From positions 186,001 to 250,000 of the IMG/VR virus record IMGVR_UViG_3300045996_002337: DNA of 64,000 nucleotides; one strand, 5' to 3'. The position numbers and the translations under genes are program-made. The notes beneath the pieces are model-generated. The model made no database searches, had not been told where the DNA came from, and worked only from the letters and a program-made list of their open reading frames with translations. Position 1 is the first letter of the stretch; each line of letters begins with the position of its first letter. This document shows, piece after piece, positions 12,347 to 56,332 of the stretch.

Positions 12347-12366
12347 ACAGAAATTTATGTCTTAAG

Positions 12367-12448
12367 CTCCACGATCTGGGCTCGAACCAGACTTGATCTT
12401 TCGATCGCGGATTAACAGTCCGCTGCCACACCCGGCGGCTCTCGTGGA
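12367..12448 (-). tRNA. tRNA-Asn(GTT)-like with long variable arm, no encoded CCA, flanks extend the acceptor stem
   Basis: GCGGA-CTGTTAA-TCCGC; GATC-GAAA-GATC variable arm; CTTAAGCTCCACGA/TCGTGGAGCTTAAG 14-bp stem. Confidence 0.65.
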
Positions 12449-12476
12449 GCTTAAGACACTTACATAATGTTCTTTG

Positions 12477-12548
12477 CTCCAGAGGCAGGGATCGAACCTA
12501 CGACGGACGCATTAACAGTGCGCTGCTCTACCGCTGAGCTACACTGGA
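12477..12548 (-). tRNA. tRNA-Asn(GTT), no encoded CCA
   Basis: Canonical cloverleaf; leader TGTTCTTTGC pairs with trailer GCAAAGAACA. Confidence 0.85.
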
Positions 12549-12577
12549 GCAAAGAACACGTTTCAAAAATACTTAGG

Positions 12578-12651
12578 AGTGACCAGAGGGACTTGAACCC
12601 TCATTATCTGCATTCACAGTGCAGCGCGTCTACCAATTCCGCCATGGCCAC
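12578..12651 (-). tRNA. tRNA-His(GTG), no encoded CCA
   Basis: CT-GTG-AA; leader ACTTAGG pairs with trailer CCTAAGT; C at -1 and T73 are atypical. Confidence 0.75.
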
Positions 12652-12668
12652 GCCTAAGTATTCTTACT

Positions 12669-12744
12669 TGGTACGTCTGAGAGGATTCGAACCTCCAACC
12701 TGAGCCTTCGTAGGACCCTGCTCTTCCAGTTGAGCTACAGACGT
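12669..12744 (-). tRNA. tRNA-Arg(ACG)
   Basis: CT-ACG-AA, CCA. Confidence 0.9.
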
Positions 12745-12750
12745 ATTGTT

Positions 12751-12826
12751 TGGTAGGGGCACAGGGATTCGAACCCTGACTTGACGGATTAAAAGTCCGC
12801 TGTGATAACCATTTCACCATACCCCC
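12751..12826 (-). tRNA. tRNA-Lys(TTT)
   Basis: CT-TTT-AA, CCA. Confidence 0.85.
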
Positions 12827-12841
12827 GTTAGGAGGTACGTT

Positions 12842-12887
12842 TGGCAGACGCGCTAGGCGTCGAAGACATTTGTCGCATTGCGCGTCC
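12842..12887 (-). ncRNA. 46-nt mini-tRNA-like element
   Basis: GGACGCG...CGCGTCT-G-CCA acceptor stem enclosing a small GACA-AA-TGTC hairpin. Confidence 0.4.
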
Positions 12888-12900
12888 TTTCTTTGTTGAT

Positions 12901-12972
12901 TGGCATCCCGTCAGAGAGTCGAACTCTGTCCATGCGTTTTGGAGACGACAGGCCCTAGCCGTAGGCCGAGAT
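12901..12972 (-). tRNA. degenerate tRNA-Trp(CCA)
   Basis: CT-CCA-AA loop, intact T arm and CCA, irregular D arm and anticodon stem. Confidence 0.6.
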
Positions 12973-12984
12973 ATTAACTTGATT

Positions 12985-13078
12985 TGGCTCCCTCGGACGG
13001 ACTCGAACCGCCATATTACGCCTTACGGCCTTTACGTCTGATTAACAGTCAGGTCTCTTACCATTAGAGTACAAGGGA
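12985..13078 (-). tRNA. tRNA-Asn(GTT) with 24-nt variable region
   Basis: CT-GTT-AA; variable arm GCC-GTAA-GGC; G73; CCA. Confidence 0.8.
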
Positions 13079-13086
13079 ATAGAACT

Positions 13087-13161
13087 TGGTGCGCCTCCCC
13101 AGAATCGAACTGGGCTCTCTCCGGTTAAGAGCCGGGACTTCGCCAGCAAAGTTTGAGACGC
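13087..13161 (-). tRNA. tRNA-Lys(CTT)
   Basis: CT-CTT-AA, CCA. Confidence 0.8.
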
Positions 13162-13169
13162 GAAGAAAG

Positions 13170-13248
13170 TCTGAACAAAAGCCTTGCGGCGTGCGGTCTC
13201 AAGGAGGTTCAATAAAAGTGATAACCTTGAAGTTGCGAGCGGTTCAGA
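13170..13248 (-). ncRNA. Y-RNA-like small RNA (no tRNA module)
   Basis: TCTGAA-C-CG...GGTTATC-ACTTTTA...GCC-GCAA-GGC-TTTTG-TTCAGA; homolog of 10100..10181. Confidence 0.6.
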
Positions 13249-13253
13249 TTGTT

Positions 13254-13328
13254 TGGCGCTCCGTAGGGGTTACGATCCCCTCTAGCCAGGTTGAAAGCCT
13301 GGTGACCTCACCAGATGTCTAACGGAGC
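13254..13328 (-). tRNA. tRNA-Glu(TTC)
   Basis: CT-TTC-AA, CCA. Confidence 0.85.
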
Positions 13329-13334
13329 ATTGTT

Positions 13335-13410
13335 TGGTGGGCCCTCACGGAATCGAACCGTGTCCTTCGGAGCTTCAATCCGACGTACGCACCAGCTATA
13401 CCAAAGACCC
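13335..13410 (-). tRNA. tRNA-Phe(GAA)
   Basis: TT-GAA-GC, CCA. Confidence 0.85.
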
Positions 13411-13418
13411 ATAAATTT

Positions 13419-13494
13419 TGGCTGGCCACCGCGGTCTCGAACCGCGAACCCCTGGTTTTGGAGACCAGTGCTCTGCCAATTGAGCTAGTGACCA
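13419..13494 (-). tRNA. tRNA-Trp(CCA)
   Basis: CT-CCA-AA, G73, CCA. Confidence 0.9.
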
Positions 13495-13498
13495 ATAT

Positions 13499-13735
13499 CT
13501 ATTTCTTCAACGCTCTAGAAGTCGAGGTCGCCTTGAGAGCTTAGTCCAACCGCCGTACGAACGTTGAAGAAATAGTCCATTGCCACCGAGGTGGTACGAG
13601 AATCCTCTTCCGAGAATCCTCCAATGGACTAAAACATATCCATCCCTTTTCGCGCTCGGCAGTCTGAAGAGTACTCGACTGATTCATGGCGGTCCATCTT
13701 GTTTATATCCCGCGAGATGTAGCAACGCGGTAAAA
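13499..13735 (-). ncRNA. structured non-coding leader (several long hairpins)
   Basis: 13-bp IR tatttcttcaacg/cgttgaagaaata, 10-bp IR tagtccattg/caatggacta, direct repeat cgagaatcct x2. Confidence 0.4.
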
Positions 13736-13744
13736 ATTGTCTCT

Positions 13745-13790
13745 AAAAAACAACCCAGGGTCCAATCTTTCGAGAGGACCCTGGTTCTTG
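13745..13790 (-). terminator. intrinsic terminator (attenuator) upstream of tRNA array 1
   Basis: AACCAGGGTCC-loop-GGACCCTGGGTTG followed by TTTTTT on the minus strand. Confidence 0.85.
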
Positions 13791-13808
13791 TGAGTGTGGA
13801 AGAAGCGC

Positions 13809-13946
13809 TTAGCTTACTTTCCTCCCTAGAACCAGGGACGTATCGGTGATAATCTCATCATTTCGCTTATTCTCGAAACGCACAGAGACGTCTTGGCTTT
13901 GTTGCCAATGCATTTCTGTTTGTTTAAAGAAGGTTACGAAGTTCAC
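13809..13946 (-). CDS. putative 45-aa leader peptide (attenuator)
   Basis: SD AGGA then GTG; MNFVTFFKQTEMHWQQSQDVSVRFENKRNDEIITDTSLVLGRKVS*; its 3' part GTCCCTGGTTCT is complementary to the terminator 5' arm. Confidence 0.55.
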   Translation of the reverse strand: MNFVTFFKQTEMHWQQSQDVSVRFENKRNDEIITDTSLVLGRKVS

Positions 13947-14061
13947 GATAAGTTCCTAGTAAGGTTGTTCTGTTGCGACGCTTGCACGTCTTGTTAAATC
14001 TATATATGCGATTTCTCAGAAGTTCAGCGATTGCCTTCATCCTGTGAAGATCAGTTTGTTT

Positions 14062-14198
14062 AACCGATGAAGCAATTATAACATGTCTTCACCGTTTGTA
14101 CACTATCTTTTTCAACCTGTTGTTTGAAGCAGCTTCGTTATGTTGCTGCTTGTTCTCAACCGATGAAGCAATTTTAACACACATGGAGCCGATGTACA
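14062..14198 (-). promoter_or_regulatory. two tandem sigma70-like promoters with a duplicated downstream sequence
   Basis: TGTACA-N16-TATAAT (14102-14075) and TGTACA-N16-TAAAAT (14198-14171), each followed by TGCTTCATCGGTT. Confidence 0.7.
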
Positions 14199-14217
14199 CA
14201 CAAAGAGTGTAACTCTT

Positions 14218-15039
14218 TCAGGTCGGTTTTGGCAACTTGATCTTCTTCAGCCCAAGAATGAAATCGTTGGCGATGAGGTCATTGTCGTCTACGATCGGGT
14301 CAAGAATCACTATTTGACCGTCGCGCAGTGCAAGGTTGCGGTCTGCCACATCATAGCGGTCGTATTTACCCATCACCTTAGCCAGTTTCACAGAGATTGC
14401 CATCAATTCAAGCACATCGGGATTCAGCTTCTCAATGTACTTTGACAAATCTGCACCTTCAATGTCTGAGTCCTCAGCATGGTAGTGAAGCATTTCGATA
14501 AGCGCGGCGCGCGGGTTGTTACCCATGCCTCCCCATTCAAACACCGTTTCGATCGACGTGTAGTTCTCAATGTCGTTGAACTCCATGCCAATCTCTTCAA
14601 GCACCTTCCGGTCCTTGAAGAGCCACAGTACGCTGTCGCCTTTGAATGGTTGAAGAAGCTCCATCTTCACGTACTTCAGACCGCGGAGGATTTCGGCATC
14701 AGCTTCAAGATTATCCGGATCTTCTTTCGCGGACTTCAAATTTAGAAGACGCGGGAGATGCTTGATTTTTGATTTGAACTTTGGCAGCCATCGCGATGGG
14801 TTCTCCATGCAGAACTCAACGAACTTTTCGTAGGCACTGTCACGATGCCAGAACTTGTACACCTTTTCGCCATCAGTTAGGGCGAGGGCATTCGCACCCC
14901 TTCCCAATGGGCGCAGCTTGGTAACCCCAGCATCGATAGCTTGCTGAAGGCGCTGTAAGACAGCAGCAACATGGCTCTCTTCGTCATTTTGCGAAGGCGC
15001 CGTGATGGATTTAATGCCGGTGAGTTCAAGTAGATTCAT
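14218..15039 (-). CDS. Ser/Thr protein kinase-like protein (T7 gp0.7-like fold)
   Basis: LGRGANA G-loop, VYKF lysine, YDVADRN catalytic loop, ILDP. ORF track start 15093; likely start 15039. Confidence 0.7.
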   Translation of the reverse strand: MNLLELTGIKSITAPSQNDEESHVAAVLQRLQQAIDAGVTKLRPLGRGANALALTDGEKVYKFWHRDSAYEKFVEFCMENPSRWLPKFKSKIKHLPRLLNLKSAKEDPDNLEADAEILRGLKYVKMELLQPFKGDSVLWLFKDRKVLEEIGMEFNDIENYTSIETVFEWGGMGNNPRAALIEMLHYHAEDSDIEGADLSKYIEKLNPDVLELMAISVKLAKVMGKYDRYDVADRNLALRDGQIVILDPIVDDNDLIANDFILGLKKIKLPKPT

Positions 15040-15099
15040 GCAGCTATTTACGTGGGGTGGGGTTGCAAACTCACTAAATAGACAAGTTGCCAAGGAGCA

Positions 15100-15804
15100 G
15101 TGACGATGAGAGACTTTCTTGAACAGAACAACACGCTAGTTGTCGGTTTAGCCGTTGGCGGAACCGTGCTTGCGATCATCCTCGGCATTCTTCTGTATGG
15201 AGCTAGGGAACTTCAAGTCGAAACGCTGAAGAGAATTGATCAACCGGCTGTTGGCGCTGTGGAGCTACCAGGGCCTAAGAATCAAATCAGCGACCGTTCG
15301 AAGAAACAGGTGGATACATTGCTAGATGAAACACCCCACATCGTCGGCGGCTGGGTCACGAAGCTCCAGTATGGAAAGACGGAAAACCCCATCATTCACT
15401 TCTGGACAGAGAGTGACACCGTCAAGGACCTGATCATTGAGTTCGGAGAAATTCAGGAGAGTGGACGCGGATCGAGCTCCGCCGAGCTAAACGCGGCGAG
15501 CGAGCAGTCGCTAAGGAATTCTGAAGAAGCCAAAAGCGGTCTCATTAAGTGTGGGCCGTTGAGCGCCACAAACCTTCTTCAAATTGCACCGTCAATCGTC
15601 AACGTTGCAAAGGGAGTCTGCCGAGCAACTATCCCACCATTTGATGAAAACGTTAACCTAGGCGTGGTGGTGCTGATTGACGTTGATCCAAATGACAACA
15701 ATGCGGACATCCAAGCGATTCGCCGCACGCTGCTTCAACTTCAGATTGACGTGTTCAACCGCGATTACCAAGGTCGTGAGACCTGGGCGCGTGCGATAGA
15801 GTGA
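15100..15804 (+). CDS. holin-T-like membrane protein (paralog 3, divergent)
   Basis: TM segment, KSGLIKC...VCRATIPPFDENVNLGVVVLI...LQIDVF; TAAATA at 15075-15080. Confidence 0.55.
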   Translation: MTMRDFLEQNNTLVVGLAVGGTVLAIILGILLYGARELQVETLKRIDQPAVGAVELPGPKNQISDRSKKQVDTLLDETPHIVGGWVTKLQYGKTENPIIHFWTESDTVKDLIIEFGEIQESGRGSSSAELNAASEQSLRNSEEAKSGLIKCGPLSATNLLQIAPSIVNVAKGVCRATIPPFDENVNLGVVVLIDVDPNDNNADIQAIRRTLLQLQIDVFNRDYQGRETWARAIE

Positions 15805-16188
15805 TTACATTCCAGCGCTGATGGCTTCGCGCTGGGCGTTCTTCAGCTCATGATCTATTGCACGTTCTTCACATTCGCTTTTTAGTTTAACGATGTCACG
15901 ATTTGTGATCGGGCGGCGGAGTGAAGTCTTCCAGCCAGTCAGCGTGTTTTTGACGCACGTGTCTGCTTTCATTTCTGCCACGATCGTTTCTGCTGTTGCA
16001 ACTGTATCAAGATACCTTTGCCAAACAACTGCGCCAATAAGGGGACCTAGAAGGACCGTAGTCAGTGTGATACCGAAAATTGATTCTTTGAACCATGTAT
16101 AGAACTTTACAGGCGCTGCCAGGATAGGCGCGATCAACCATCCAGCACGTGCGGCGCGCCGCGCCCAAAGACGACGAGTTGCGGTCAT
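15805..16188 (-). CDS. hypothetical membrane protein (paralog of 16185..16586)
   Basis: ATRRLWARRA, TM segment, D-x-CVK...ITN-x-D...C. Confidence 0.65.
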   Translation of the reverse strand: MTATRRLWARRAARAGWLIAPILAAPVKFYTWFKESIFGITLTTVLLGPLIGAVVWQRYLDTVATAETIVAEMKADTCVKNTLTGWKTSLRRPITNRDIVKLKSECEERAIDHELKNAQREAISAGM

Positions 16189-16586
16189 TTCAAAATCTCC
16201 ATTTGTTTCTCACGCTCACGTAGACCATCACAAGCTTTGATGGCCCAGTCGACATCCCAGTTAGTAATGGCTTTAAGGGTGGCGCCTTGAACCAACAGCT
16301 TTTTCACACACGGGTCTTTTGCGGCTTTCGCAATACTTTCGTTGGTTGCGGCTCGGGTCTCATGGAAAATGACGAAGTAGAGAAGCGCTGTAATAAGCGG
16401 TGGAAGCCAGATTCCCATCCATGCAATCATGAATTTGCGGATGGCTTCGACAAGAGAGCCAAGACCCCATACGAGTCGATGCGCTCGTCGGGCCCACAGG
16501 CGACGGGTTGCTGTACTTTTCACCGTGAGAATCCTTCTTCTAGAGCCATGACCAGCTTTGGAATGTCGGCGGCATAGAAGCCGCAC
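16185..16586 (-). CDS. hypothetical membrane protein (paralog of 15805..16188)
   Basis: Same ATRRLWARRA and Cys motifs. Confidence 0.6.
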   Translation of the reverse strand: MRLLCRRHSKAGHGSRRRILTVKSTATRRLWARRAHRLVWGLGSLVEAIRKFMIAWMGIWLPPLITALLYFVIFHETRAATNESIAKAAKDPCVKKLLVQGATLKAITNWDVDWAIKACDGLREREKQMEILK

Positions 16587-17317
16587 GAGTTCAACGTATT
16601 GATTTCTACAACCTTCATTCCATCTGGCGTGTCACAGACGTCGATCACAAATGCGGCGTGAGGCTGCCATTCAGCAATTCTATCACGCGCGTAGTCGAAG
16701 AAACACTGGTCAACCTCCGAAGAGTAGATGACCTGGTCGCCGCGCTTGTAGAGCGAAGCCGTGATGATGTCACCGTGTACGACCCAGAAACGGTATTCGG
16801 AGTAGATCACCTTCGGTTTGGTGACTTGAACGAGGGTGTTCTTCGTCAAGGAGTTGCCGTAGTCCTCTTCAAGGACGCAGACCTTTCGCTTCCAGGTGTA
16901 GAATTCTTCCTTCTCGAAAACCTTACCGGCGAATACCTTGCTGTCCTCAATTGGTCGAATGAAGGCGAGATGCTCCTCACCACGTTCAAAGAACGGAAAC
17001 ACCGCGTCCTCGAAACGGCTGACCTTCGAGTCGAAGTTAAGCATATGCTCGCCCCACTTCTCGCGCTGCATTTCAAAGTTGCACGGCTCGAGGTCGAACA
17101 CGCCAGGTGTCCAAATCTTGCGCTTCGCATAGTGCCGGAGGGAGTACGACCCCATGCAGATCACGTTCTTGTGGTCAAGCTCGGGCTCTGGCATGAGGTC
17201 ACCAACGAATGGAACGACCTTGTGAATGGAGTAGGGCAAGCCAAGCCGCTCGAGGGTGTCGAGTAGGGTCTGGTAGGCGGCCTCATTGAAGAGGTTGTTC
17301 TGTAGAATCCAATGCAT
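16520..17317 (-). CDS. ATP-grasp protein, R2K/DUF4343-like
   Basis: FIRP...SKVFAG, SEYRFWVVHG, AFVIDV...VVEINTLNSCGFY. Confidence 0.8.
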   Translation of the reverse strand: MHWILQNNLFNEAAYQTLLDTLERLGLPYSIHKVVPFVGDLMPEPELDHKNVICMGSYSLRHYAKRKIWTPGVFDLEPCNFEMQREKWGEHMLNFDSKVSRFEDAVFPFFERGEEHLAFIRPIEDSKVFAGKVFEKEEFYTWKRKVCVLEEDYGNSLTKNTLVQVTKPKVIYSEYRFWVVHGDIITASLYKRGDQVIYSSEVDQCFFDYARDRIAEWQPHAAFVIDVCDTPDGMKVVEINTLNSCGFYAADIPKLVMALEEGFSR

Positions 17318-17318
17318 G

Positions 17319-17666
17319 TCAGTGCAGCGGCGGGCTGTCGTCGAGGTAGATGTTGTCGTCATCTTCAGCTGTCACTTCTATCAGGTGCAAGATGATCGTC
17401 TGAAGAACTTCAGCATCCAGTTCGTGGATGATTGGGGCCTCTTCTCCGTCACCACCTATTTCGTAGCGCATGAGGTCGCGTGACCCACCCTCAATCGGAT
17501 CCGCGATCACGATGTGCGAAAAGTTCATCAGCTGATAGGAGCTGTCAGGACCAACGGTGAACATGGGCGCGAGGTCCCCAAATTCACCGTCATCGTCGAC
17601 GGTAACTTGTGCGAAGCACTTTTCGCCTTCAACGTCAGGCACACGAAAAATGGCAAGCTTTGACAT
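17319..17666 (-). CDS. hypothetical acidic protein
   Basis: ORF; start MSKLAIF at 17666. Confidence 0.55.
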   Translation of the reverse strand: MSKLAIFRVPDVEGEKCFAQVTVDDDGEFGDLAPMFTVGPDSSYQLMNFSHIVIADPIEGGSRDLMRYEIGGDGEEAPIIHELDAEVLQTIILHLIEVTAEDDDNIYLDDSPPLH

Positions 17667-17950
17667 CACATCACCTCGAAAGCAAAGTTGAGCAGTTCTT
17701 GGGCACCCCATAGATCGAAGGGCACAGGGTCAGGGGTTTCACCGCAGCAGAACTCTTCGAGCTCGGCAGGTGAGAGCTTCGAGAGGGCAATGTCCACCGC
17801 CTTGATGTCAGCTTCAGCATAACGCTCCTCGACGAGATGCATCACGTGGTTAACAACCGATTCCTCGGTCACCCCACGGTAAATGACGCCACTGTCGTAG
17901 GCAATCTCAATGACGGCCTTGATGAGCGATGGGTACTTGTGTGGGATCAT
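17666..17950 (-). CDS. hypothetical protein
   Basis: 94-aa ORF coupled to both neighbours. Confidence 0.6.
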   Translation of the reverse strand: MIPHKYPSLIKAVIEIAYDSGVIYRGVTEESVVNHVMHLVEERYAEADIKAVDIALSKLSPAELEEFCCGETPDPVPFDLWGAQELLNFAFEVM

Positions 17951-19014
17951 TTTGCAAGCTCGTTTGGAATGAAGGCGCGGCCGGCCCGCCAGTGTTTTTG
18001 CGTTTGAACATGATTGGCGCGAACGAACTTTGCCACGCTCTTGCGAAAATCGCCGTAGCTAAACTCACCAGCAATCCGAACCACGTAACCTTCGTCCTTT
18101 TCAAAGTCTAGACTCTTCTCAATGTCACGAACAGTTTTCTCATCCCACATGCCATCATAAAGAACTGGGACAGGTGTTAGGCCGAGCAGCTCACACCAGA
18201 CGATGGTGTCATCCCACCTCAAGCAGCGGTTCTTTGCATCCCAAATGCTAAAGCACATGAAGTATGAAGGCAGGGCGGTGTAGTGAATCGAGTGCTCGGC
18301 CCAGAGGTTCTCGCCGCAAACACGCCAGCCTTCAGGAAGATTGAAGCAGACGTTCTCGATCAGGAACTTCTTGACCCAGGCCCGGTCTTCGCCACCACGG
18401 CTGTCAATCGAACGTGCGTGAATGTGACCATCGCTGTACGCGGTGGTGTTCTCACCGTCCATCTTCTTGGTGATGACTACACGGCGACCTTCAAACTGCG
18501 AGCAGTCCTTCAGGGCTTTGTCGTCGTCTTGTTTTCCAGGAGACCAGGGGAGGTGGAACGTCCGCTCGTACTTGACGTACGAGGTAAACAGATCCAACGC
18601 TCCACCCGCGGCCAGAACTTTCTGTACGGACTCGTCAAAGAAGAGCTCGCCCTTGGCGCGGCGACCGTCAGCAAGTACTGGGTTTCCCCATTTGTCGTAC
18701 TGATGGTCAGGGTAGAAGTGCGGAGGAACCACGATCTTCGTGATGCCTGCTGCTTGACGCACGTCCTCGACCGAGTAGAACGTTTTCTCGCAGAGAAGAT
18801 GATGCAGCTCGCACACGGTCGCGCCGTTCTCGAGATAGTAGCCACCATCTGGCCACAGCCGCCGCTCGAGAATGTGATGCGCGTCGAGCTTGCCCTCAGG
18901 GGTTTGCGCTGCAGTGATTCCGCAGAAAACGCACTTGTGACCATCTCGAAGGAACACACCTTCGCGGAAGTTGTCTCGAGTAAGTAGTTTGGGCTCTGCC
19001 ATGTTATTCTCCAT
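17947..19014 (-). CDS. HNH-domain / RNA ligase fusion protein
   Basis: N-terminal CVFC...DAHHI...NGATVC-x-x-HH; C-terminal ligase motifs KMDGEN, CGEN, EGYVVR, K-F-V-R. Confidence 0.85.
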   Translation of the reverse strand: MENNMAEPKLLTRDNFREGVFLRDGHKCVFCGITAAQTPEGKLDAHHILERRLWPDGGYYLENGATVCELHHLLCEKTFYSVEDVRQAAGITKIVVPPHFYPDHQYDKWGNPVLADGRRAKGELFFDESVQKVLAAGGALDLFTSYVKYERTFHLPWSPGKQDDDKALKDCSQFEGRRVVITKKMDGENTTAYSDGHIHARSIDSRGGEDRAWVKKFLIENVCFNLPEGWRVCGENLWAEHSIHYTALPSYFMCFSIWDAKNRCLRWDDTIVWCELLGLTPVPVLYDGMWDEKTVRDIEKSLDFEKDEGYVVRIAGEFSYGDFRKSVAKFVRANHVQTQKHWRAGRAFIPNELAK

Positions 19015-19032
19015 TTACAGAGGATTATAACG

Positions 19033-33617: not shown

Positions 33618-34712
33618 TCAGGTCAGAGCACCAGCAATTGCTTCGCGGCGAGCCTGCTCAATTGCCTGACCGAGCTCCTTACCTGGAGGAATATCAGGAA
33701 AATCTGCAGCTTTAACTGGCTTTGTAACTGAGGCTGCCCTCCACAGATCAAAAGAGTTCACCTTAGGTGACTCACCAATCGATGGCATCAGTTCAACTGC
33801 TTGCACCAAATCATCGAAGGTAGAGCCTTCGCTCCATGCCTTCGCTGCTTTCAGTAAGTTGAAGACGTCATCAACGGTGCGTTCCATGGTTCGAACCCGA
33901 TTCACATTCTCAAACAGCGTTCGCGTGCGAGTGTCAGCGCTGACACGAACAGTGGTCGAAGACGGAACAGCTGCGAGCGCAGTGTGAAACATGACGCGTT
34001 CTGCTTCATCAACAAACACCGAGACTACTGACGCAGCGGCGATGACAGATTTCAGTCGAGCTGCATCAATGTGACCATACAGGCCTTCGAAGAACAAAAC
34101 GTTTTCATCGCAGTGCATGGCCTTCATGAGCCAGAAAAAGCGCCACGGTGTTTCTTCTTGGAAGACCTTGTGGAGCTCTGCCCAGAAGCGTTCAGCGGGC
34201 AGTTGATTCAGATCGCCGTTCTCGACCATGCGCTTCGCCAAATCCATCGTTTCGGTTGCAACACTGAAGTTGTCGTAGCGTGCAAAGAAGCGGGCTAGCC
34301 GCACCACCCGCAGTGGATCTTCACCGAAGGCAGCAGAGACGTGGCGCAGAACGCGCGCTTCCAGATCTTGCTGTCCACCCCAAGGATCGATGATTTTGCC
34401 GTCCTCATCCTCAGCCATCGCATTGATGGTCAGGTCTCGTCTCGACAGGTCGTCGGCCAGGGTCACACCGTCGGTTTCAACTGCGAAGCCGAGGTAGCCC
34501 TTGCCCGTCTTGCGCTCGGTTCTAGCAAGGGCGAACTCCTCACCACGTTCGTTCAGAAACACGGGGAAATCCGCACCCACCTGCTGAAAGCCCATGGCAA
34601 TCATTTGCTCGGGCGTGGAGCCGACAACGACGTAGTCAAAATCCTTCGGATCTCGCCCCATCAGCTTGTCACGAACTGCACCACCGACCGTGTAGACCTG
34701 ATATGTTTTCAT
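33618..34712 (-). CDS. cca: tRNA nucleotidyltransferase (class II CCA-adding enzyme)
   Basis: VGGAVRD...[45 protein letters not shown]. Confidence 0.92.
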
Positions 34713-34748
34713 AGATGCATTATACACTGCCCACTCTAGGTTGTAAAC

Positions 34749-37905: not shown

Positions 37906-38841
37906 TTAGATAAGGTCAGCCTTATTTATTGTCAGCGGTTCCACAGTTCGGAATTCTTTTTCAGTCGCCTGATAGAAAGTCCAGCTGCCCAGTTCAATGC
38001 AGGTAAGGGCACACCAGCCCCGGACCTTTATGTTGCCGCTGTAGCTCTGCTCACCGAATGAACCGTACGCACATGTATCGATGTTCGTCTGTCCGACAAT
38101 CGTGACTGGCCGCTGCATGATGGTGTGACCACTGATGATGTGCGACAACTTGTCGTTGAAGACAGCAGTGCCGTTTCGCAGCTTCAATGTGCGAATGATC
38201 TTTTCGCGGTTGCTTAGGTCGGCACGATAAAAATCGTAGAACAGATGGCGGCCCCACAGAAAAGAATCACCATCCCCGTTCTGCTTGGTCGCCAAGGCGT
38301 GAACCTTCTGCCCATCCGACAGAATTTCATCGGTTATGACGTTGCCTGGCGGCAGTTCGGCGTGGATCACATGGAACTTCTTCCCATCCGGTCGATTGAT
38401 CGTGATCATGAAAGGAAGGTTCTCAACGAAGGTCAGCAGGTCAATCAGCTCCATGTCCTCGTCACTGATCAGTGGCATGTGCTCAACACGCCCAGCTTCC
38501 TTCGCTTCAAGAGCGCGAGAAACGTTCCACGCCTCAGCTCCCCACATGCCACCGTTCTGGAACCAAAATTGCCCCATGTAGCCACCGCGAAACGCTTCAA
38601 GCATCATCTGCTCGTGGTTAGAGAGGACTGCATGGAACCAGGGCTTGCGTAGCAGGGCAAGGCAGCCAAGTGAATCTGGTCCGCGATCGACGAGGTCACC
38701 AACTGAGAACATTCGGTCCTTTGTGGAATCAAATGCAAGGTTCTCAAGCAGGTTCTCGAAGCATGCAAGTGATCCATGCAGGTCACCGATTACGAAGTCC
38801 CTACCATCGTTGTTTGGTTCAAATGTTTTGAGAATTGGCAT
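37906..38841 (-). CDS. metallophosphoesterase (lambda-PP/PphA-like Ser/Thr phosphatase)
   Basis: GDLHG, VGDLVDRGPDS, LSNHE, IHAE, SGHT. Confidence 0.9.
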   Translation of the reverse strand: MPILKTFEPNNDGRDFVIGDLHGSLACFENLLENLAFDSTKDRMFSVGDLVDRGPDSLGCLALLRKPWFHAVLSNHEQMMLEAFRGGYMGQFWFQNGGMWGAEAWNVSRALEAKEAGRVEHMPLISDEDMELIDLLTFVENLPFMITINRPDGKKFHVIHAELPPGNVITDEILSDGQKVHALATKQNGDGDSFLWGRHLFYDFYRADLSNREKIIRTLKLRNGTAVFNDKLSHIISGHTIMQRPVTIVGQTNIDTCAYGSFGEQSYSGNIKVRGWCALTCIELGSWTFYQATEKEFRTVEPLTINKADLI

Positions 38842-40626: not shown

Positions 40627-41222
40627 TGGGACTTATTGCTGATCGTGACGGAGTGGACGTTGTTATCACTCCAGCTGGAAATGAACACCCATTCAAGGAG
40701 ACATTGGATTTCAACTATGGGCGCCTTCAGCTTGCAAAGCTTGAGGACCGCTCGAAGGAATGGAAGATCAATGTCTATGATGGACGCACCCGCCTAGGTA
40801 AAGCCGAGTTCAAGGCCTACCAATTCATCGCTGATGGTGTCACAAGACGAACCATCAGTCTTTCATTTCTAGAACTTGATGAACGTCAACGTGGCATGAA
40901 GCGAAGCTATGAGCTCGTCAACTTCATTATCGACATGGTCACGAAGTCATGCGACCGTGATTGGGGTGAAGCCCACGGAAAGCCAGTTGTCTTCATCGAA
41001 CAAAAGTTCTTTGACAACGTGAAGAAAGAAGATCGCGGTCTCTTTTTCGGCATCTTCAAGAAGGTCATTGGCGCCATTGTTGGTGGCAAGGATGACAAGC
41101 CAAAAGTAACGCCAGACCACGATCTGGTGCTTTCACCAATAGGTGATGACGTGTCAATGCAGCTGATTGAAGGGCACGTCCTCAGGTCTGATGGGCTTAT
41201 TTCCCCGATTGGTCATCGCTGA
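40623..41222 (+). CDS. hypothetical protein
   Basis: 199-aa ORF coupled to the glycosyltransferase. Confidence 0.6.
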   Translation: MMGLIADRDGVDVVITPAGNEHPFKETLDFNYGRLQLAKLEDRSKEWKINVYDGRTRLGKAEFKAYQFIADGVTRRTISLSFLELDERQRGMKRSYELVNFIIDMVTKSCDRDWGEAHGKPVVFIEQKFFDNVKKEDRGLFFGIFKKVIGAIVGGKDDKPKVTPDHDLVLSPIGDDVSMQLIEGHVLRSDGLISPIGHR

Positions 41223-50363: not shown

Positions 50364-50366
50364 GAA

Positions 50367-51697: not shown

Positions 51698-51784
51698 GTG
51701 TTTCTCCGTTGTGATGTTGCATTATAGAACAACCTACAAAAGAAGTACACAGCAAAAAGGGCCCGAAGGCCCTTTTCTTAAACG

Positions 51785-51961: not shown

Positions 51962-51974
51962 TTTGGCTCCTTAA

Positions 51975-52550: not shown

Positions 52551-52585
52551 CGAGTAATACCTTTCATCGTGAATCAACAGGAATG

Positions 52586-52843
52586 TTAGTCTTCTTTTCG
52601 AGCGCGGAGAAGTTCCTTTGCCTTTTCAACTTTTTCTTTTTGATCGGAGGGTAGGTTATCACCGCCACGATTTACGTAAAAGTTTAAAGAGGCCATCGCC
52701 TTTCGAAGATTACCACCATGTGATGACCATGCCCAATCAGCTATCTTTTTGGCAGAGCCATCGGCAAAGAGCCCCTCTGGAGGGTGCTTCTTCGTCTTGA
52801 CATCGCTCAATTGCTTCTCGCAAAGAAGTTCATTGACGAGCAT
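52586..52843 (-). CDS. DUF3175 family protein
   Basis: PPEGLF...SAKKIA...AMASLNFYVNRGG-x-NL. Confidence 0.8.
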   Translation of the reverse strand: MLVNELLCEKQLSDVKTKKHPPEGLFADGSAKKIADWAWSSHGGNLRKAMASLNFYVNRGGDNLPSDQKEKVEKAKELLRARKED

Positions 52844-52901
52844 TTCATCTCCTTATTCATTTGCCCCAGAGGGCAGGGAGGACCGAAGCCCTCCCTTGGT
52901 C

Positions 52902-53510
52902 TTACTTCGTACCCTTGAAAGCAGGCGACTGCTCTTCAAGTTTCTCTGCGCCGATGTCCTTGATCTTTTGTGCGTCTTCAACGGCGCCTGGCAGAACAGT
53001 GTTCATGTCCATTGCGCGTTGCTTAGCAACTGGATCGCGGGTTGGATCACCTGCAGCGAGGAGAGCTTCGCGCTCACGTTCGATACGGGCGGCACGGCGG
53101 AAGCTGTCTTCACCTTCGCGCTCTTCAAAAGCTTCTCCGAAAACACGCTGCTGTTCGAAGTAGTCCTTACCTTCGACTTCGGCAGTGATGCTCTTCAGAG
53201 TTTCTTGCTCTTGGTTAACTTCAGCCTTGCGATCAACTTGCTTGTCGCCTTCTTGGGCCTTCTTATCACCTTCAACCGACTTAGCGGCTTCACGTGAATC
53301 AGCTGGCTGCGTTTGCGCGGTACGAGCAGTTGGTGCTGGTGCTGGTGCTGGTGCTGCAGTTGGTGTAACTGGAACTGCAGTAGCATTTGCGGTTGTTTGG
53401 TTGCCGGTAGGCAGCTGAGCTGGTTGCTGAGCCGTTACCTTTGCGTTCGGTGCTGAAGTTTCGGCAGTTGCCTTTTGATCAGCTGGAACGTTTGGGTTGG
53501 TTGTTGCCAT
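52902..53510 (-). CDS. hypothetical low-complexity hydrophilic protein
   Basis: 202 aa, Ala/Thr/Glu-rich; SD AGGAG. Confidence 0.7.
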   Translation of the reverse strand: MATTNPNVPADQKATAETSAPNAKVTAQQPAQLPTGNQTTANATAVPVTPTAAPAPAPAPTARTAQTQPADSREAAKSVEGDKKAQEGDKQVDRKAEVNQEQETLKSITAEVEGKDYFEQQRVFGEAFEEREGEDSFRRAARIEREREALLAAGDPTRDPVAKQRAMDMNTVLPGAVEDAQKIKDIGAEKLEEQSPAFKGTK

Positions 53511-53648
53511 TTGTCATCTCCTAAAAAGGTTGGAATGTTCCTGGCTCGTTTGAGGGAACCAGCATTCAGGAAGAATCAACTTCATCCTGACTTTATTTAC
53601 AGCGCTGGTCCCAAATAGAGCCGGGATCGGTGTCACATTTTGAAAAAT

Positions 53649-54080
53649 TTACATTAGCTGCTGTTTGCGGGCCAGCATCTGTTGCCCAAGTTTTGCCGTT
53701 TCGAGCCCACGTTCTTGAAGCTGAGGAAACATTTCTGTTTCTTCTTCCTTGACGTGATGCTCAATTGCCAACTTTAATGCCTTGATTTCCATGTCAAGGC
53801 GCATGCCAGTCTTGAGCTTCTCAATGTCAGCGATAAGCTTCTTCGCCATTGAGTGCTCCTTGACAGCTTCCTCAATGAGGTCGTCATCGCCAAGAACATC
53901 ACGAGCAGCCGGGTAGAAGAGTTCTTCTTCAATGGTTGTGTGTGCCTTTAGCGACTTGCAGATGTTGAACGCGATCGCTGCTTTTTCGGCGGCGTCGTTG
54001 TCGTTGTCAAGCTTTTCGAACTGCGCGAAGAGGGCTTCTACTTCACGGTGATCTTTTTCAAGAAGTTGAATTGCGTCCAT
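53649..54080 (-). CDS. hemerythrin/HHE cation-binding domain protein
   Basis: DH...H-x-x-IEEELFYPA...EH...HHVKEEETEMFP. Confidence 0.9.
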   Translation of the reverse strand: MDAIQLLEKDHREVEALFAQFEKLDNDNDAAEKAAIAFNICKSLKAHTTIEEELFYPAARDVLGDDDLIEEAVKEHSMAKKLIADIEKLKTGMRLDMEIKALKLAIEHHVKEEETEMFPQLQERGLETAKLGQQMLARKQQLM

Positions 54081-54090
54081 AATTGCCTCC

Positions 54091-54444
54091 TTAGATGTCA
54101 GTTTTCTTGGCCCCGCTTTGGGCGCGGGTGCGTTGAGCAGTCTGCCGTTCAGCTTCAAGTGGATCATAGATCGTCGATTGATCAATCTTCTTATCCTCTT
54201 TGATGCCGACAGCAACAGCTGGAAGAGATTGTCCCTGATTTACGGACTGGAGCGTCGTATCACCAACACCTTTTTGACCATCGTCTGGAGTTGGCTGTGG
54301 CGGTAGACGATTGATATCACCTTCGCGCTCGAGGCGCTTTAGGCGTTCATCTTCTGTTTCAACTTCTAGCGGCTCAACTGCTTCAAGATCTGGATCTTTA
54401 GGGAGCGAGTCGAAGTCCTTGCCTTTTTGAATTGGCGTGTTCAT
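54091..54444 (-). CDS. hypothetical hydrophilic protein
   Basis: 117-aa ORF. Confidence 0.6.
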   Translation of the reverse strand: MNTPIQKGKDFDSLPKDPDLEAVEPLEVETEDERLKRLEREGDINRLPPQPTPDDGQKGVGDTTLQSVNQGQSLPAVAVGIKEDKKIDQSTIYDPLEAERQTAQRTRAQSGAKKTDI

Positions 54445-54502
54445 GTCATCATCCTTTCATTCTACATGAAAGGTGCGGTGCCTCGGCACCGCACTCTGCA
54501 TC

Positions 54503-54886
54503 TTATTCGCGAACTGGTTTTGGCTGTTCTTGTGGTGGCATTGGAGCCGGAACAGGTTTTGGAGTTTGATCAACCTTAGGCGGCACTACTGGCGCGGGAG
54601 CTGCAGTGACAGGTGGAACTACAACTTGAACTGGGCGTTCAATTTCGCAGTCGTAAAACTCCGTGATTTCGCCGCGGTCAATGCGCTTTGGATTTTGACC
54701 AAGCGTATGATTGCCAGCGTAAAACCAAGGAAGGATGCAACCGTTGTCAACGGTGCCCTTACCAGCGTGGTGGTTGCTATAGTATTCAAAGCCACCGTTT
54801 GGTGTGCGCTTTCCCACAGGCTCGTGAGCGAAAGCGGATCCAGCGGCCGCCGAAACGGCGATAGCCGTAAGAAGTACCTTCATCAT
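54503..54886 (-). CDS. hypothetical exported protein
   Basis: Signal peptide; Pro-rich tail ending KPVRE. Confidence 0.65.
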   Translation of the reverse strand: MMKVLLTAIAVSAAAGSAFAHEPVGKRTPNGGFEYYSNHHAGKGTVDNGCILPWFYAGNHTLGQNPKRIDRGEITEFYDCEIERPVQVVVPPVTAAPAPVVPPKVDQTPKPVPAPMPPQEQPKPVRE

Positions 54887-54940
54887 GTAATCCCCTTAGG
54901 AATCGCTACAACATCGTAGCGTAATCCTATTTATTGAGGA

Positions 54941-55129
54941 TCACCCGTTGACGATCTTTGTTACGACATCTTGATCATCAACAAAGACCTTTAGTCTGGA
55001 AGGTTTTACACTGGCGTCAGTGTAATAGCCAGGGCGGAGCACCACAACAGACCCATGAAAGTTGGCTCTGATCAGAGGCAGAACCACAATAAGGGGGCGG
55101 CCGATGTATTGAGTGAAGGCTGGAGTCAT
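54941..55129 (-). CDS. peptidase-inhibitor I78-like small protein
   Basis: LRPGYYT-D...RL-x-VFVD...VV-x-KI-x-x-G. Confidence 0.55.
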   Translation of the reverse strand: MTPAFTQYIGRPLIVVLPLIRANFHGSVVVLRPGYYTDASVKPSRLKVFVDDQDVVTKIVNG

Positions 55130-55166
55130 AAATCTCTCCTAAATTTGAAATGCCATTAAACATGTC

Positions 55167-55243
55167 TGGTGCCCAAGGTCGGACTCGAACCGACAGATTG
55201 CAGGTTTTGAATCTGCTGCCTATACCAATTCGGCTACTTGGGC
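55167..55243 (-). tRNA. tRNA-Leu(CAA) with short variable arm
   Basis: TT-CAA-AA, A73, CCA. Confidence 0.75.
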
Positions 55244-55390
55244 AGTATTTAATTGACACCTTTCGTTTCGTAGCCAAATTACGAGAACCTTCTCCAGTCA
55301 AGGGAGCGTTTGTCGTAAAATCAAACCACGGTCTCGAAGAAGCAAGGTGCGTTCCGAGGCGACTAACTCTCAGTAGCACGTGTCAAAACT

Positions 55391-55484
55391 TGGCGGTGAC
55401 GATGGGATTCGAACCCATGGAGCCCGATGAAGGACCCTCTTCCTTAGCAGGGAAGTGCAATAAACCTGGCTCTGCCACGTCACC
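55391..55484 (-). tRNA. tRNA-Ser(GCT)
   Basis: CT-GCT-AA, long variable arm, G73, CCA. Confidence 0.9.
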
Positions 55485-55696
55485 ATAAATTCTTGCGCGC
55501 TGGTATTCGTTGCAGAACGACTTGTAGCTTTCACCTACCAGCAAGATCCAGTTGCACACCGTCAGCCACTGGCAATCTCCACCTCCGCACTCTTAAGGGC
55601 CGCTGAGGTCTCCCTAGCCTTCTTAACGAATCAGACCAAAACGTTCCTTTAGAGTCAAGGACAACTACCACATAGACGCTGTGGCCTCGCGAATTC

Positions 55697-55783
55697 TGGA
55701 GGAGAATAACGGAATCGAACCGTCACCTGTAAACAAATGGGCTGGCTTTCGAAACCAGTTACGCGCCATGCGTCCTATTCTCC
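55697..55783 (-). tRNA. tRNA-Ser(CGA)
   Basis: TT-CGA-AA, long variable arm, CCA; 5' part overlaps the NADAR stop. Confidence 0.8.
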
Positions 55784-56211
55784 ATGACTAACTTCCAGAG
55801 ATCAGCTCGAATTTCCATCAGCATGATCCCCAGCCTGTTCTTTCCAACACCTCGGCAAACTCCCCAGTACGTGTCGTTCCAGTGGTTAGTTTCCTCGATG
55901 TAAGCATCTCCTGTTGCCAAGAGCTGCGTCATAAACGGTTCCTGTGAGAACTTCTGGATCAAGAGGTCTCTCATGACGTCCTCTTTGATCTGTTCCCAAT
56001 CTTCTCGAATCTGAATCACGCGACCAAACTTCTTTGCCTCTGCGCCAGAAGCCGCCCTTGCGATCTTCTTTCTAAGCTCAATGTCAAGCGTCTTTGCCGC
56101 CTGGTATGCGTGTTCAGTGGATGGAAACGCGACGCCTTCAAACTGGACCCATACGGACCAAAAGTTTGACAGGAACCTATGGTCTCCGCTAAATCCCTTG
56201 ATCTCGTCCAT
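55759..56211 (-). CDS. NADAR (YbiA/DUF1768) family protein
   Basis: FLSNF...STEHAYQAAK...KFSQ...LLATG...E-x-x-x-W-x-D-x-YWG...GKNRLG-x-x-LME-x-R. Confidence 0.92.
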   Translation of the reverse strand: MDEIKGFSGDHRFLSNFWSVWVQFEGVAFPSTEHAYQAAKTLDIELRKKIARAASGAEAKKFGRVIQIREDWEQIKEDVMRDLLIQKFSQEPFMTQLLATGDAYIEETNHWNDTYWGVCRGVGKNRLGIMLMEIRADLWKLVMENRTHGA

Positions 56212-56224
56212 CTTAGTTTCCTAT

Positions 56225-56332
56225 TGGCTCCCCAACCTGGGCTCGAACCAGGGACCTGCGGATTAACTAGAACACCCGATAAACCAGATGTTCGGTGTCA
56301 GTCCGACGCTCTACCAACTGAGCTATTGGGGA
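56225..56332 (-). tRNA. tRNA-Asn(GTT) interrupted by a 32-nt insertion in the anticodon loop
   Basis: Canonical Asn body; loop reads CTG[ACACCGAACATCTGGTTTATCGGGTGTTCTAG]TTAA; removing 32 nt restores CT-GTT-AA. Confidence 0.8.

What the first reader, a model, noticed from the sequence alone, without database searches (positions are those of the whole stretch)
12361..56332. Four tRNA-Asn(GTT) genes with four different architectures
Seen: canonical without CCA (12477), long variable arm (12985), long arm plus 14-bp acceptor (12367), and anticodon insertion (56225). The other GUN-anticodon tRNAs are also present in multiples (Asp x2, Tyr x2, His x1). Known: bacterial tRNA-Asn is type I, and GUN/queuosine tRNAs are the targets of colicin-E5-like anticodon nucleases. 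Inference: structural diversification to evade or decoy a host tRNase.
Basis: partly seen in the sequence, partly recalled or inferred. Interest (0 to 1): 0.6.

Follow-up and report, generated by a model that had tools for sequence, protein, structure and literature searches.

The report
Four variant phage tRNA-Asn genes
A 350-kb phage carries four asparagine tRNA genes, each with an add-on that also recurs in other phages (an extra arm, a tiny intron, or a long clamping helix in place of an encoded CCA end), so they look like working genes whose purpose is still untested.

Summary
The window lies in a 349,660-bp jumbo-phage genome with about 50 tRNA genes, four of them tRNA-Asn(GUU). All four keep the Asn hallmarks (CUGUUAA loop, U1-A72, G73).

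None looks like decay. Each variant has relatives in other viral contigs with compensatory base changes.

Three recurrent modules explain the four architectures:
1. **CCA-less genes in a leader-trailer helix.** The helix extends the acceptor stem by at least 11 bp (12366, 12476; also His 12576 and Pro 62112).
2. **An extra stem-loop in the variable region.** There are two unrelated types (12366, 12985). The GAAA-capped type occurs in 47 viral contigs but only 2 contigs among 185,579 prokaryote species genomes.
3. **A 32-nt hairpin mini-intron between nucleotides 34 and 35 (56225).** Nearly the same element sits at the same position in Tyr(GUA) and Leu(UAA) tRNAs of other phages. It is neither group I nor an evident bulge-helix-bulge intron.

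These modules also occur in Lys, Met, Glu, Ile, Pro, Gly and Leu tRNAs, so the proposed GUN/queuosine and colicin-E5 link is not supported. A broader counter-defence role is plausible: the phage encodes an RNA ligase and a CCA-adding enzyme. It remains untested, and no RNA data were available.

The parts
12366..12448 (-). tRNA-Asn(GUU), 83 nt. Class-II-like, with a variable arm GAUC-GAAA-GAUC, an unusual 5-bp D stem with 5-nt loop, U1-A72, G73 and no encoded CCA.
   Evidence: ARAGORN; fold. Orthologues L128 and L135 share the odd D arm and show compensatory changes. Variable-stem covariation in 34 sequences.
12357..12459 (-). Leader-trailer helix enclosing the 12366 gene. Leader 12449-12459 pairs with 12357-12367, so the helix runs on from the acceptor stem.
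   Evidence: Fold z = -7.8; 11 contiguous pairs. Orthologue L128 has a 16-bp helix of different sequence.
12476..12548 (-). Canonical-length tRNA-Asn(GUU), 73 nt, no encoded CCA.
   Evidence: ARAGORN and Rfam 60.5 bits. Orthologue in L157/L164/L010 is also CCA-less.
12467..12559 (-). Leader-trailer helix enclosing the 12476 gene (leader 12549-12559 pairs with 12467-12477).
   Evidence: Fold z = -4.9; 11 contiguous pairs here and 12 of 13 in the orthologue.
12985..13078 (-). tRNA-Asn(GUU), 94 nt, with a 24-nt variable region: outer GUA/UAU pairs, an internal loop, then a 3-bp stem capped by a GNRA loop. CCA is encoded.
   Evidence: ARAGORN and Rfam 52.2 bits. Family of 13 distinct members. 100% of 232 cells paired, 13 of 26 pairs with compensatory change, 0 of 500 shuffles as high.
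56225..56332 (-). tRNA-Asn(GUU) gene interrupted in the anticodon loop. The exons make a canonical 76-nt tRNA with CCA.
   Evidence: Rfam 55 bits with a 34-nt unaligned insertion in the loop. ARAGORN intron mode and in-silico removal. Alignment with intron-less relatives.
56267..56298 (-). 32-nt mini-intron between nucleotides 34 and 35: a 5-nt 5' tail, a 10-bp hairpin with tetraloop (56270-56293) and a 3-nt 3' tail.
   Evidence: The same element sits at the same position in six other tRNAs, Tyr GUA and Leu UAA. The tenth stem pair covaries. There is one copy in the genome.
12566..12662 (-). tRNA-His(GUG) (12576-12651) of the same processing class: no CCA, with a leader-trailer helix.
   Evidence: L019 His has the same architecture.
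62101..62199 (-). tRNA-Pro(UGG) (62112-62188) of the same processing class: no CCA, with a 15-bp leader-trailer helix.
   Evidence: Orthologue L050:7526-7600 has six compensated positions in the helix.
33618..34727 (-). Class II nucleotidyltransferase, CCA-adding-enzyme-like. It is the likely supplier of CCA to the CCA-less tRNAs.
   Evidence: Pfam PolyA_pol head domain E = 2.5e-20. Best solved relatives are CCA-adding enzymes, E = 1e-21.
17947..19014 (-). RNA ligase (PF09414 domain in the C-terminal half). It is a candidate sealing enzyme for tRNA repair or splicing.
   Evidence: Pfam E = 7e-27. 62% identical to a Ralstonia phage RsoM2USA protein.
37906..38841 (-). Calcineurin-like, lambda-phosphatase-like phosphoesterase. 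It is a possible RNA end-healing enzyme (inference only).
   Evidence: Pfam Metallophos. Closest solved structure is the lambda Ser/Thr phosphatase 1g5b, E = 1e-22.

Best explanation
**Shown**
- The four genes are separate, conserved paralogues of a phage tRNA-Asn.
- All retain the Asn identity set: GUU in a CUGUUAA loop, G73 and U1-A72.
- Each carries one or two of three structural modules that recur across tRNA-rich phages regardless of amino-acid type:
  1. A CCA-less gene clamped in a selected leader-trailer duplex.
  2. An extra GNRA- or UUCG-capped stem-loop in the variable region, which turns a class I tRNA into a class-II-like one. This class is essentially phage-specific.
  3. A sequence-conserved 32-nt hairpin mini-intron between nucleotides 34 and 35.

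**Inferred**
- All four mature into Asn-decoding tRNAs charged by host enzymes. The phage has no AsnRS/AspRS-type synthetase.
- The duplex class is released by an endonuclease that cuts double-stranded RNA, probably host RNase III, and then receives CCA from the phage CCA-adding enzyme.
- The mini-intron is removed by a protein endonuclease that recognises the hairpin sequence. The exons are then joined by an RNA ligase, for which the phage's own enzyme is a candidate.
- The net effect is an Asn-tRNA supply that differs from the host's in body shape and in maturation route. A host factor that recognises the standard tRNA body or precursor (a tRNase, a modifier or a decay pathway) could then not remove all of it. 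This would be counter-defence by diversification, and it is not specific to GUN tRNAs.
For: **Reality and constraint**
- Detection.
- 12985 family: 100% pairing and 13 of 26 pairs with compensatory change.
- GAAA-arm class: 34 sequences, two arm pairs with four pair types each and no unpaired cells.
- Orthologues of 12366 (L128, L135) and of 12476 (L157/L164) exist.

**Leader-trailer helix**
- 8 of 30 CCA-less tRNAs have an extension of at least 7 bp, against 0 of 226 CCA-encoding tRNAs.
- Orthologous helices differ by compensated changes.
- The same architecture occurs in unrelated contigs.

**Phage specificity of the long-arm Asn**
- 47 viral contigs against 2 contigs in 185,579 species genomes.
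- It is annotated as tRNA-Asn in Phapecoctavirus, Novosibvirus and Henunavirus records.
- It is the only Asn tRNA in 12 of 28 tRNA-rich stretches.

**Mini-intron**
- There are seven distinct carriers.
- Removal at 34|35 gives Asn GUU, Tyr GUA and Leu UAA, which fit the tRNA bodies.
- The exons are intact in all carriers.
- The loop and the tenth stem pair vary while nine stem pairs are fixed, G.U pairs included.

**Context**
- CCA-adding enzyme and RNA ligase are present.
- No synthetase of the Asn/Asp/Lys type and no TGT are present.
Against: - There are no expression, processing or charging data. No RNA run holds the region.
- No splicing endonuclease, RtcB or RNase III gene was found in the phage.
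- The RNA ligase was not found on the three other intron-bearing contigs, although these are only 4-32% complete.
- The invariance of nine stem pairs is partly an artefact of the search. The element was found with exact or nearly exact patterns, and a covariance model found no diverged copies in about 2 Mb of held sequence.
- Ralstonia phage RsoM2USA, a relative by RNA ligase, has only canonical-length Asn genes. The modules are therefore dispensable.
- The counter-defence purpose rests on analogy alone.
Confidence: 0.5

Rival explanations
1. One reading: the diversification is aimed at colicin-E5-like or PrrC-like anticodon nucleases that hit queuosine (GUN) tRNAs. The variants would act as resistant copies or as decoys.
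For: - The mini-intron splits the 34|35 bond, which is the bond colicin E5 cuts (established knowledge). It occurs in Asn and Tyr tRNAs.
- RNA ligase and CCA-adding enzyme are present.
- In a capped scan, the GAAA-arm architecture is most frequent on GUU, CAU, CUU and UUU anticodons. These are families that include known nuclease targets.
Against: - Five of the seven distinct mini-intron carriers (four lineages) are Leu(UAA), which is not a GUN tRNA.
- The helix class includes Pro and Gly.
- Extra arms occur on many non-GUN isotypes.
- All four Asn loops are canonical, so a loop-reading nuclease would still cut the mature tRNAs.
- The identity elements are intact, which a decoy does not need.
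Confidence: 0.12
2. Maturation or handling logic rather than defence. The helix, the arm and the intron would route copies through different processing pathways or timings. Alternatively, they would give phage enzymes (CCA-adding enzyme, ligase, modifiers) a handle to tell phage tRNAs from host tRNAs.
For: - The helix is strictly tied to absence of CCA.
- The phage encodes its own CCA-adding enzyme.
- The modules are independent of isotype.
Against: No enzyme with a matching specificity was identified, and no expression-timing data exist.
Confidence: 0.2
3. The interrupted gene at 56225 is dead. The 32-nt hairpin would be a selfish DNA-level insertion (REP- or MITE-like) that is never spliced out, tolerated because other Asn copies exist.
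For: - Its distribution is sporadic. It is absent from relatives G001-G004, whose cognate genes are uninterrupted.
- Sequence identity is very high between carriers whose exons differ.
- No splicing enzyme was found.
Against: - The insertion is at exactly the same phosphodiester in three isotypes, and the length is always exactly 32 nt.
- Exons in all seven carriers keep perfect cloverleaves and CCA. The four Leu lineages have different but fully paired acceptor stems.
- The G.U pairs make the hairpin specific to the tRNA-sense strand.
Confidence: 0.25
4. Recoding. The long variable arm would recruit SerRS (or LeuRS or TyrRS), so that AAC/AAU codons are partly read as another amino acid.
For: - SerRS reads the long arm rather than the anticodon, and it shares G73 with the Asn identity set (established knowledge).
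- The arms are stable, capped helices.
Against: - The acceptor stems are Asn-type (U1-A72, C2-G71), not Ser-type.
- The arms are short (3-4 bp) compared with tRNA-Ser arms.
- In many phages the long-arm gene is the only Asn tRNA held.
Confidence: 0.04
5. Simple decay of redundant duplicates.
For: - There are four copies where one would do.
- Rfam misses 12366.
- RsoM2USA manages with canonical-length Asn genes.
Against: - Compensatory substitutions occur in every helix, including the added ones.
- Orthologues exist in many contigs.
Confidence: 0.04

Closest known systems
Phage-encoded tRNAs that counter tRNA-targeting defences: T5 tRNA-Lys against PARIS (PMC11464382), T5/SP15 tRNA-Tyr against retron Eco7 (PMC11555353), and the anticodon-loop-variant hypothesis (PMC10264068)
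   Same: Large tRNA arrays in a virulent-type phage, several copies per anticodon, and RNA repair genes alongside.
   Different: The known cases work through loop substitutions or over-expression. Here the loops are canonical, and the differences lie in the variable arm, the precursor helix and an intron. No defence system is identified.
Class II tRNAs (Leu, Ser, Tyr, Sec) and allo-tRNAs with long variable arms on unusual anticodons (the latter recalled from the literature, not read here)
   Same: A helical extra arm lies between the anticodon and T arms, and some members have class-II-like D arms.
   Different: The anticodon and acceptor identity are Asn, the arms are only 3-4 bp with GNRA caps, and the class is almost confined to viral contigs. 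In the same phages, tRNA-Leu often lacks its arm.
Enigmatic tRNA introns of Lak megaphages and other jumbo phages (PMC6784885, PMC13037316)
   Same: Short, sequence-conserved insertions in phage tRNA genes with no known splicing mechanism.
   Different: This is a different phage group using the standard genetic code. The element is a defined 32-nt hairpin, shared between three isotypes at one fixed position.
Group I intron of cyanobacterial and plastid tRNA-Leu(UAA), and archaeal/eukaryal bulge-helix-bulge introns
   Same: The insertion site 34|35 equals the tRNA-Leu(UAA) group I site (established knowledge), and most carriers are Leu(UAA).
   Different: 32 nt is far too short for a group I ribozyme, and the Leu/Tyr copies cannot end in the terminal G that group I introns have. 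No conserved bulge-helix-bulge could be drawn by eye, and ViennaRNA MFE folds of six carriers show none. The phage has no splicing endonuclease.
Leader-trailer processing helices of bacterial rRNA operons (RNase III substrates), and T4 CCA-less tRNAs that need host 3' trimming and CCA addition (recalled)
   Same: A long helix forms between the 5' leader and the 3' trailer of a stable RNA, and the genes lack CCA.
   Different: Here the helix encloses single tRNAs and is continuous with the acceptor stem, so the discriminator base is paired. The processing enzyme is unknown, and no phage RNase III was found.

Membership tests
tRNA (Rfam RF00005 / cloverleaf) | Cloverleaf with acceptor, D, anticodon and T arms that scores above the family threshold. 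| tested here: met
   12476 scores 60.5 bits, 12985 scores 52.2 and 56225 scores 55 (gathering score 29). 12366 fails Rfam, but ARAGORN finds it, it folds as a cloverleaf, and it has covarying orthologues.
tRNA-Asn | GUU anticodon in a 7-nt loop, discriminator G73, and the U1-A72 pair that bacterial GatCAB uses (established identity rules). | tested here: met
   All four genes read CUGUUAA, G73 and U1-A72, the 56225 gene after removal of the 32 nt. Charging itself was not tested.
Class II (long-arm) tRNA | A helical variable arm of more than 10 nt that is conserved by covariation. | tested here: met
   12366 has a 15-nt arm and 12985 a 24-nt arm. Arm pairs covary.
tRNA-Ser-like identity (for mischarging) | G1-C72, G2-C71 and C11-G24, with a long arm of at least 5 bp. 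| tested here: not met
   The window genes have U1-A72 and C2-G71. The 12985 gene has U11-A24, and the arm stems are 3-4 bp.
Group I intron | A ribozyme core of about 200 nt or more (P3-P9), with a U before the 5' splice site and a terminal G. | tested here: not met
   The insert is 32 nt. The 5' exon ends in G in the Asn and Tyr carriers, and the Leu/Tyr copies end in A. There is no Rfam intron hit.
Archaeal/eukaryal BHB tRNA intron | Two 3-nt bulges separated by a 4-bp helix at the splice sites, plus an EndA-type endonuclease. | tested here: inconclusive
   Apart from the hairpin, no pairing around the splice sites is shared by the carriers. This rests on the aligned carriers read by eye and on ViennaRNA MFE folds of six of them; no dedicated BHB search was run. 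PF01974 is absent from the phage, as is RtcB. Host enzymes could not be examined.
Colicin-E5 target set (queuosine tRNAs) | The feature is restricted to Tyr, His, Asn and Asp tRNAs. | tested here: not met
   The modules also occur on Leu, Pro, Gly, Lys, Met, Glu, Ile and other isotypes.
RNase III processing stem | About 20 bp of continuous or coaxial duplex, with cleavage demonstrated. | not testable with these tools
   The continuous helices are 16-18 bp, and stacking on the T stem would make about 22 bp. Cleavage cannot be tested here.

The most novel reading that the evidence does not exclude
The 32-nt hairpin could be a new kind of tRNA intron in bacterial viruses. It would be protein-dependent, recognised by its sequence, and inserted between the wobble base and position 35 of Asn, Tyr and Leu(UAA) tRNAs. 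An unidentified endonuclease would remove it, and a phage RNA ligase would join the exons. Together with the phage-specific class-II-like tRNA-Asn and the leader-trailer-clamped CCA-less precursors, it would define a virus-specific repertoire of tRNA architectures and maturation routes.
Probability: 0.35. Interest if true: 0.8.

Novelty: new variant of a known kind. Interest (0 to 1): 0.66.

Why it matters
Phage tRNAs are now seen as weapons against host tRNA-cutting defences, but the known tricks are loop substitutions and over-expression.

This locus shows that phages also alter tRNA body plan and precursor architecture, and that selection maintains the changes. A class-II-like tRNA-Asn is present in cultured coliphages (Phapecoctavirus), in a Proteus T5-like phage and in an Erwinia phage. 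The extra arm can therefore be tested directly in laboratory strains.

If the mini-intron is spliced, it would be a tRNA intron type with no known splicing machinery in bacteria. Annotation pipelines also miss or mislabel these genes: Rfam missed one and ARAGORN's default mode missed another.

Tried and rejected
1. **Relatives through a neighbouring 291-aa ORF.** None were found in IMG/VR.
2. **Nucleotide searches of GenBank phages with the two tRNA clusters.** These gave only generic tRNA matches. The 12985 gene alone gave no match.
3. **Expression evidence.** No RNA run holds the region. Laying three DNA metagenome runs showed only intron-less bacterial tRNA-Asn halves that stop at the exon boundary. 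It also showed two short near-identical contigs from soil and wastewater.
4. **An HNH endonuclease gene shared by intron-bearing contigs.** It was rejected as a marker because intron-free relatives have it too.
5. **RNA ligase on the other intron-bearing contigs.** It was not found, but the contigs are only 4-32% complete, so the result is uninformative.
6. **Splicing at the canonical 37|38 site.** This would give Val, Ile, Arg or Lys anticodons. It was rejected because the tRNA bodies and 3' loop halves match Asn, Tyr and Leu.
7. **Diverged copies of the mini-intron.** A relaxed pattern and a covariance model over about 2 Mb of held phage loci found none.
8. **Phage genes for RtcB, EndA, RNase III, AsnRS/AspRS/LysRS and TGT.** All are absent.
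9. **TAG recoding as an explanation for the two CUA tRNAs.** It is not supported.
10. **Other interrupted tRNA-like hits in relatives (107-125 nt).** The inserts are heterogeneous and ARAGORN's intron calls are unconvincing, so these were left unresolved.
11. **The stretch 12901-12972 as a fifth, degenerate tRNA.** The fold is no better than shuffled sequence.

Full report
**Setting.** The window is bases 186,001-250,000 of a single-contig virus record of 349,660 bp with 51% G+C. ARAGORN finds 51 tRNA genes, a permuted tmRNA and two CUA-anticodon tRNAs in the genome. Of these, 47 tRNAs lie in the window, all on the minus strand, and Rfam adds three more. By RNA ligase similarity the nearest cultured relatives are Ralstonia phage RsoM2USA (62% amino-acid identity) and Caulobacter phages CcrBL9 and CcrSC (59%). 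IMG/VR contigs reach 76%. The window also encodes an RNA ligase, a CCA-adding-enzyme-like nucleotidyltransferase and a lambda-phosphatase-like phosphoesterase.

**The observation.** All four GUU genes exist at the stated places.
- 12476-12548 is a canonical 73-nt tRNA without CCA.
- 12366-12448 has a 15-nt variable arm (4 bp plus GAAA), a 5-bp D stem and no CCA. Rfam does not see it even at E<=1.
- 12985-13078 has a 24-nt variable region and encodes CCA.
- 56225-56332 is seen by Rfam with an unaligned stretch in the anticodon loop. ARAGORN's intron mode sees it as Asn with a 32-nt intron.

All four begin UCC, pair U1 with A72 and have G73.

**Module 1: CCA-less genes in a leader-trailer helix.**
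- In the genome, 45 tRNA genes encode CCA and six do not. Four of the six (Asn 12366, Asn 12476, His 12576, Pro 62112) have a 5' leader that pairs with the 3' trailer for 11-15 bp, continuous with the acceptor stem.
- Over ten sources, 0 of 226 CCA-encoding tRNAs have an extension of at least 7 bp, against 8 of 30 CCA-less tRNAs.
- Orthologous helices differ by compensated changes. The Pro helix of a 332-kb relative differs at six positions, all compensated, and the helix of the 12366 orthologue L128 has a different sequence and 16 bp.
- The same architecture occurs on long-arm Asn genes of unrelated contigs L106 and L146.
- The helix is therefore under selection. Its function is inferred: release by a double-strand-specific nuclease, then CCA addition by the phage enzyme. 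The phage has no RNase III gene.

**Module 2: extra variable arms.**
- The 12985 type forms a family of 13 distinct genes in related viral contigs. On nine co-linear members, every one of 232 pair cells is a standard pair and 13 of 26 pairs show changes on both sides. No shuffle out of 500 reaches this. In four other members the inner arm is replaced by other hairpins, such as a 5-bp stem with a UUCG loop.
- The 12366 type (NNNC-GAAA-GNNN) matched annotated tRNA-Asn genes of 85-86 nt in Escherichia phage ESCO13, Proteus phage Stubb and Erwinia phage Hena1.
- A pattern for this arm on a GUU loop hits 47 IMG/VR contigs (33 distinct genes). It hits only two metagenome-assembled contigs among one genome each of 185,579 prokaryote species.
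- In 34 aligned genes, the two central arm pairs each show four pair types, with 17-18 double changes and no unpaired cell.
- L128 and L135 share the peculiar D arm of 12366 and differ by compensated changes.

**Arm changes are not peculiar to Asn.**
- The closest relative has long-arm Lys, Asp, Glu (two) and Ile genes. Other relatives have long-arm Gln, Gly and Pro.
- The own genome and its relatives carry 77-nt tRNA-Leu genes that lack the usual arm.
- Among 857 distinct tRNAs in held loci, 5-19% of most class I isotypes are 82 nt or longer.
- A capped scan for the same arm on any anticodon gave GUU 25, CAU 17, CUU 11, UUU 10 and a few others.

**Module 3: the mini-intron.**
- Between the anticodon-stem strands of the 56225 gene lie 39 nt instead of 7.
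- The core (GAACAUCUG, six bases, CGGGUGUUC) occurs once in the genome. An exact-pattern scan found it inside tRNA genes of four viral contigs and further metagenome contigs. The remaining hits are coding or chance matches.
- In all seven distinct carriers the insert is 32 nt, and removing it between nucleotides 34 and 35 gives Asn GUU, Tyr GUA or Leu UAA.
- Only this site fits all carriers and their bodies. The Leu carriers have Leu-type D arms and long arms with A73, and the Tyr carrier is class II with A73. The window gene aligns with intron-less Asn genes of relatives across a clean 32-nt gap.
- The stem is 10 bp. Nine pairs are identical in all carriers, including G.U pairs that exist only on the tRNA-sense strand. 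The tenth pair is C-G, U-A, A-U or G.U, and the tetraloops differ.
- The invariance is partly built into the searches. However, a relaxed pattern and a covariance model found no diverged copies.
- The element is too small for a group I intron. No conserved bulge-helix-bulge could be drawn by eye from the aligned carriers, and single-sequence folds of six of them show none; no dedicated motif search was run.
- The phage lacks EndA-type endonuclease and RtcB.
- Relatives G001-G004 lack the element.

**Interpretation.**
- The three non-canonical copies are not decaying, and the interrupted copy keeps intact exons.
- All keep Asn identity, and the phage has no synthetase of the Asn/Asp/Lys type and no TGT. 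Host enzymes must therefore serve them.
- I take them to be working Asn decoders with different bodies and maturation routes.
- A counter-defence purpose fits the repair genes and the literature on tRNA-targeting immunity (PMC7824862, PMC10264068, PMC11464382, PMC11555353), but nothing here tests it.
- The queuosine and colicin-E5 reading fails on distribution and on the unchanged loops.
- One coincidence remains a lead: the intron splits the bond that colicin E5 cuts, which is also the site of the tRNA-Leu(UAA) group I intron.

**Limits.** There are no RNA data and the host is unknown. Most comparison contigs are fragments. The isotype counts come from loci chosen through Asn patterns or from a capped scan.

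Noticed in passing
window 55167-55243 (minus); also L050:9851-10009, L053 and L054: There are 77-nt tRNA-Leu genes without the long variable arm that bacterial tRNA-Leu always has: one in this genome, three in relative G002 and six in G005. In held phage loci, 57% of the distinct Leu genes are shorter than 82 nt.
   Followed up: partly
genome positions 258611-258769, about 8.6 kb beyond the window end: Two adjacent tRNAs carry the amber-suppressor anticodon CUA. Long ORFs do not lengthen when TAG is read as sense, so the phage appears to use the standard code. TAG is its rarest stop codon, ending 51 of 418 long ORFs.
   Followed up: partly
genome 259276-259675: ARAGORN predicts a permuted (two-piece) tmRNA gene with the tag peptide ANEANYRMAA.
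   Followed up: no
window 12842-12887 (minus): A 46-nt hairpin has an 8-bp stem followed by GCCA and a UUCGA motif in its loop, which resembles a tRNA minihelix. It lies in the 158-nt gap between Asn 12985 and Lys 12826. The fold z-score is -1.9.
   Followed up: partly
window 11248-11319 and 60186-60254 (minus): Rfam finds two further tRNA hits (60.6 and 29.4 bits) that ARAGORN does not list.
   Followed up: no
G005:38694-38816 and 40813-40924; G002:167880-167987 and 120643-120749; G001:217771-217895: Relatives have tRNA-family hits of 107-125 nt carrying other, unrelated insertions. Interrupted tRNA genes therefore seem common in this phage group.
   Followed up: partly
window 9139-13494 and 55167-63952, spacers between tRNA genes: Most CCA-encoding tRNAs are followed by a short conserved spacer (AACAAT or AACAT) that abuts the next tRNA. 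The trailers of the CCA-less class resemble it (for example GCAAAGAACAT). This is probably a shared processing signal.
   Followed up: no
window 55759-56211 (minus), next to the interrupted Asn gene; also 53649-54215, 16520-17362 and 9220-9738: A NADAR-domain protein (ADP-ribose-related) lies directly downstream of the interrupted tRNA. A hemerythrin-like protein, an R2K-type ATP-grasp protein and a DUF1003 protein lie among the tRNA arrays.
   Followed up: no
L249:1210-1803 (genome about 184.2-184.8 kb): An HNH endonuclease is conserved at 47-74% identity in relatives G001, G002, G004 and G005, with a weak 39% partial match in G003. It does not track the mini-intron.
   Followed up: yes
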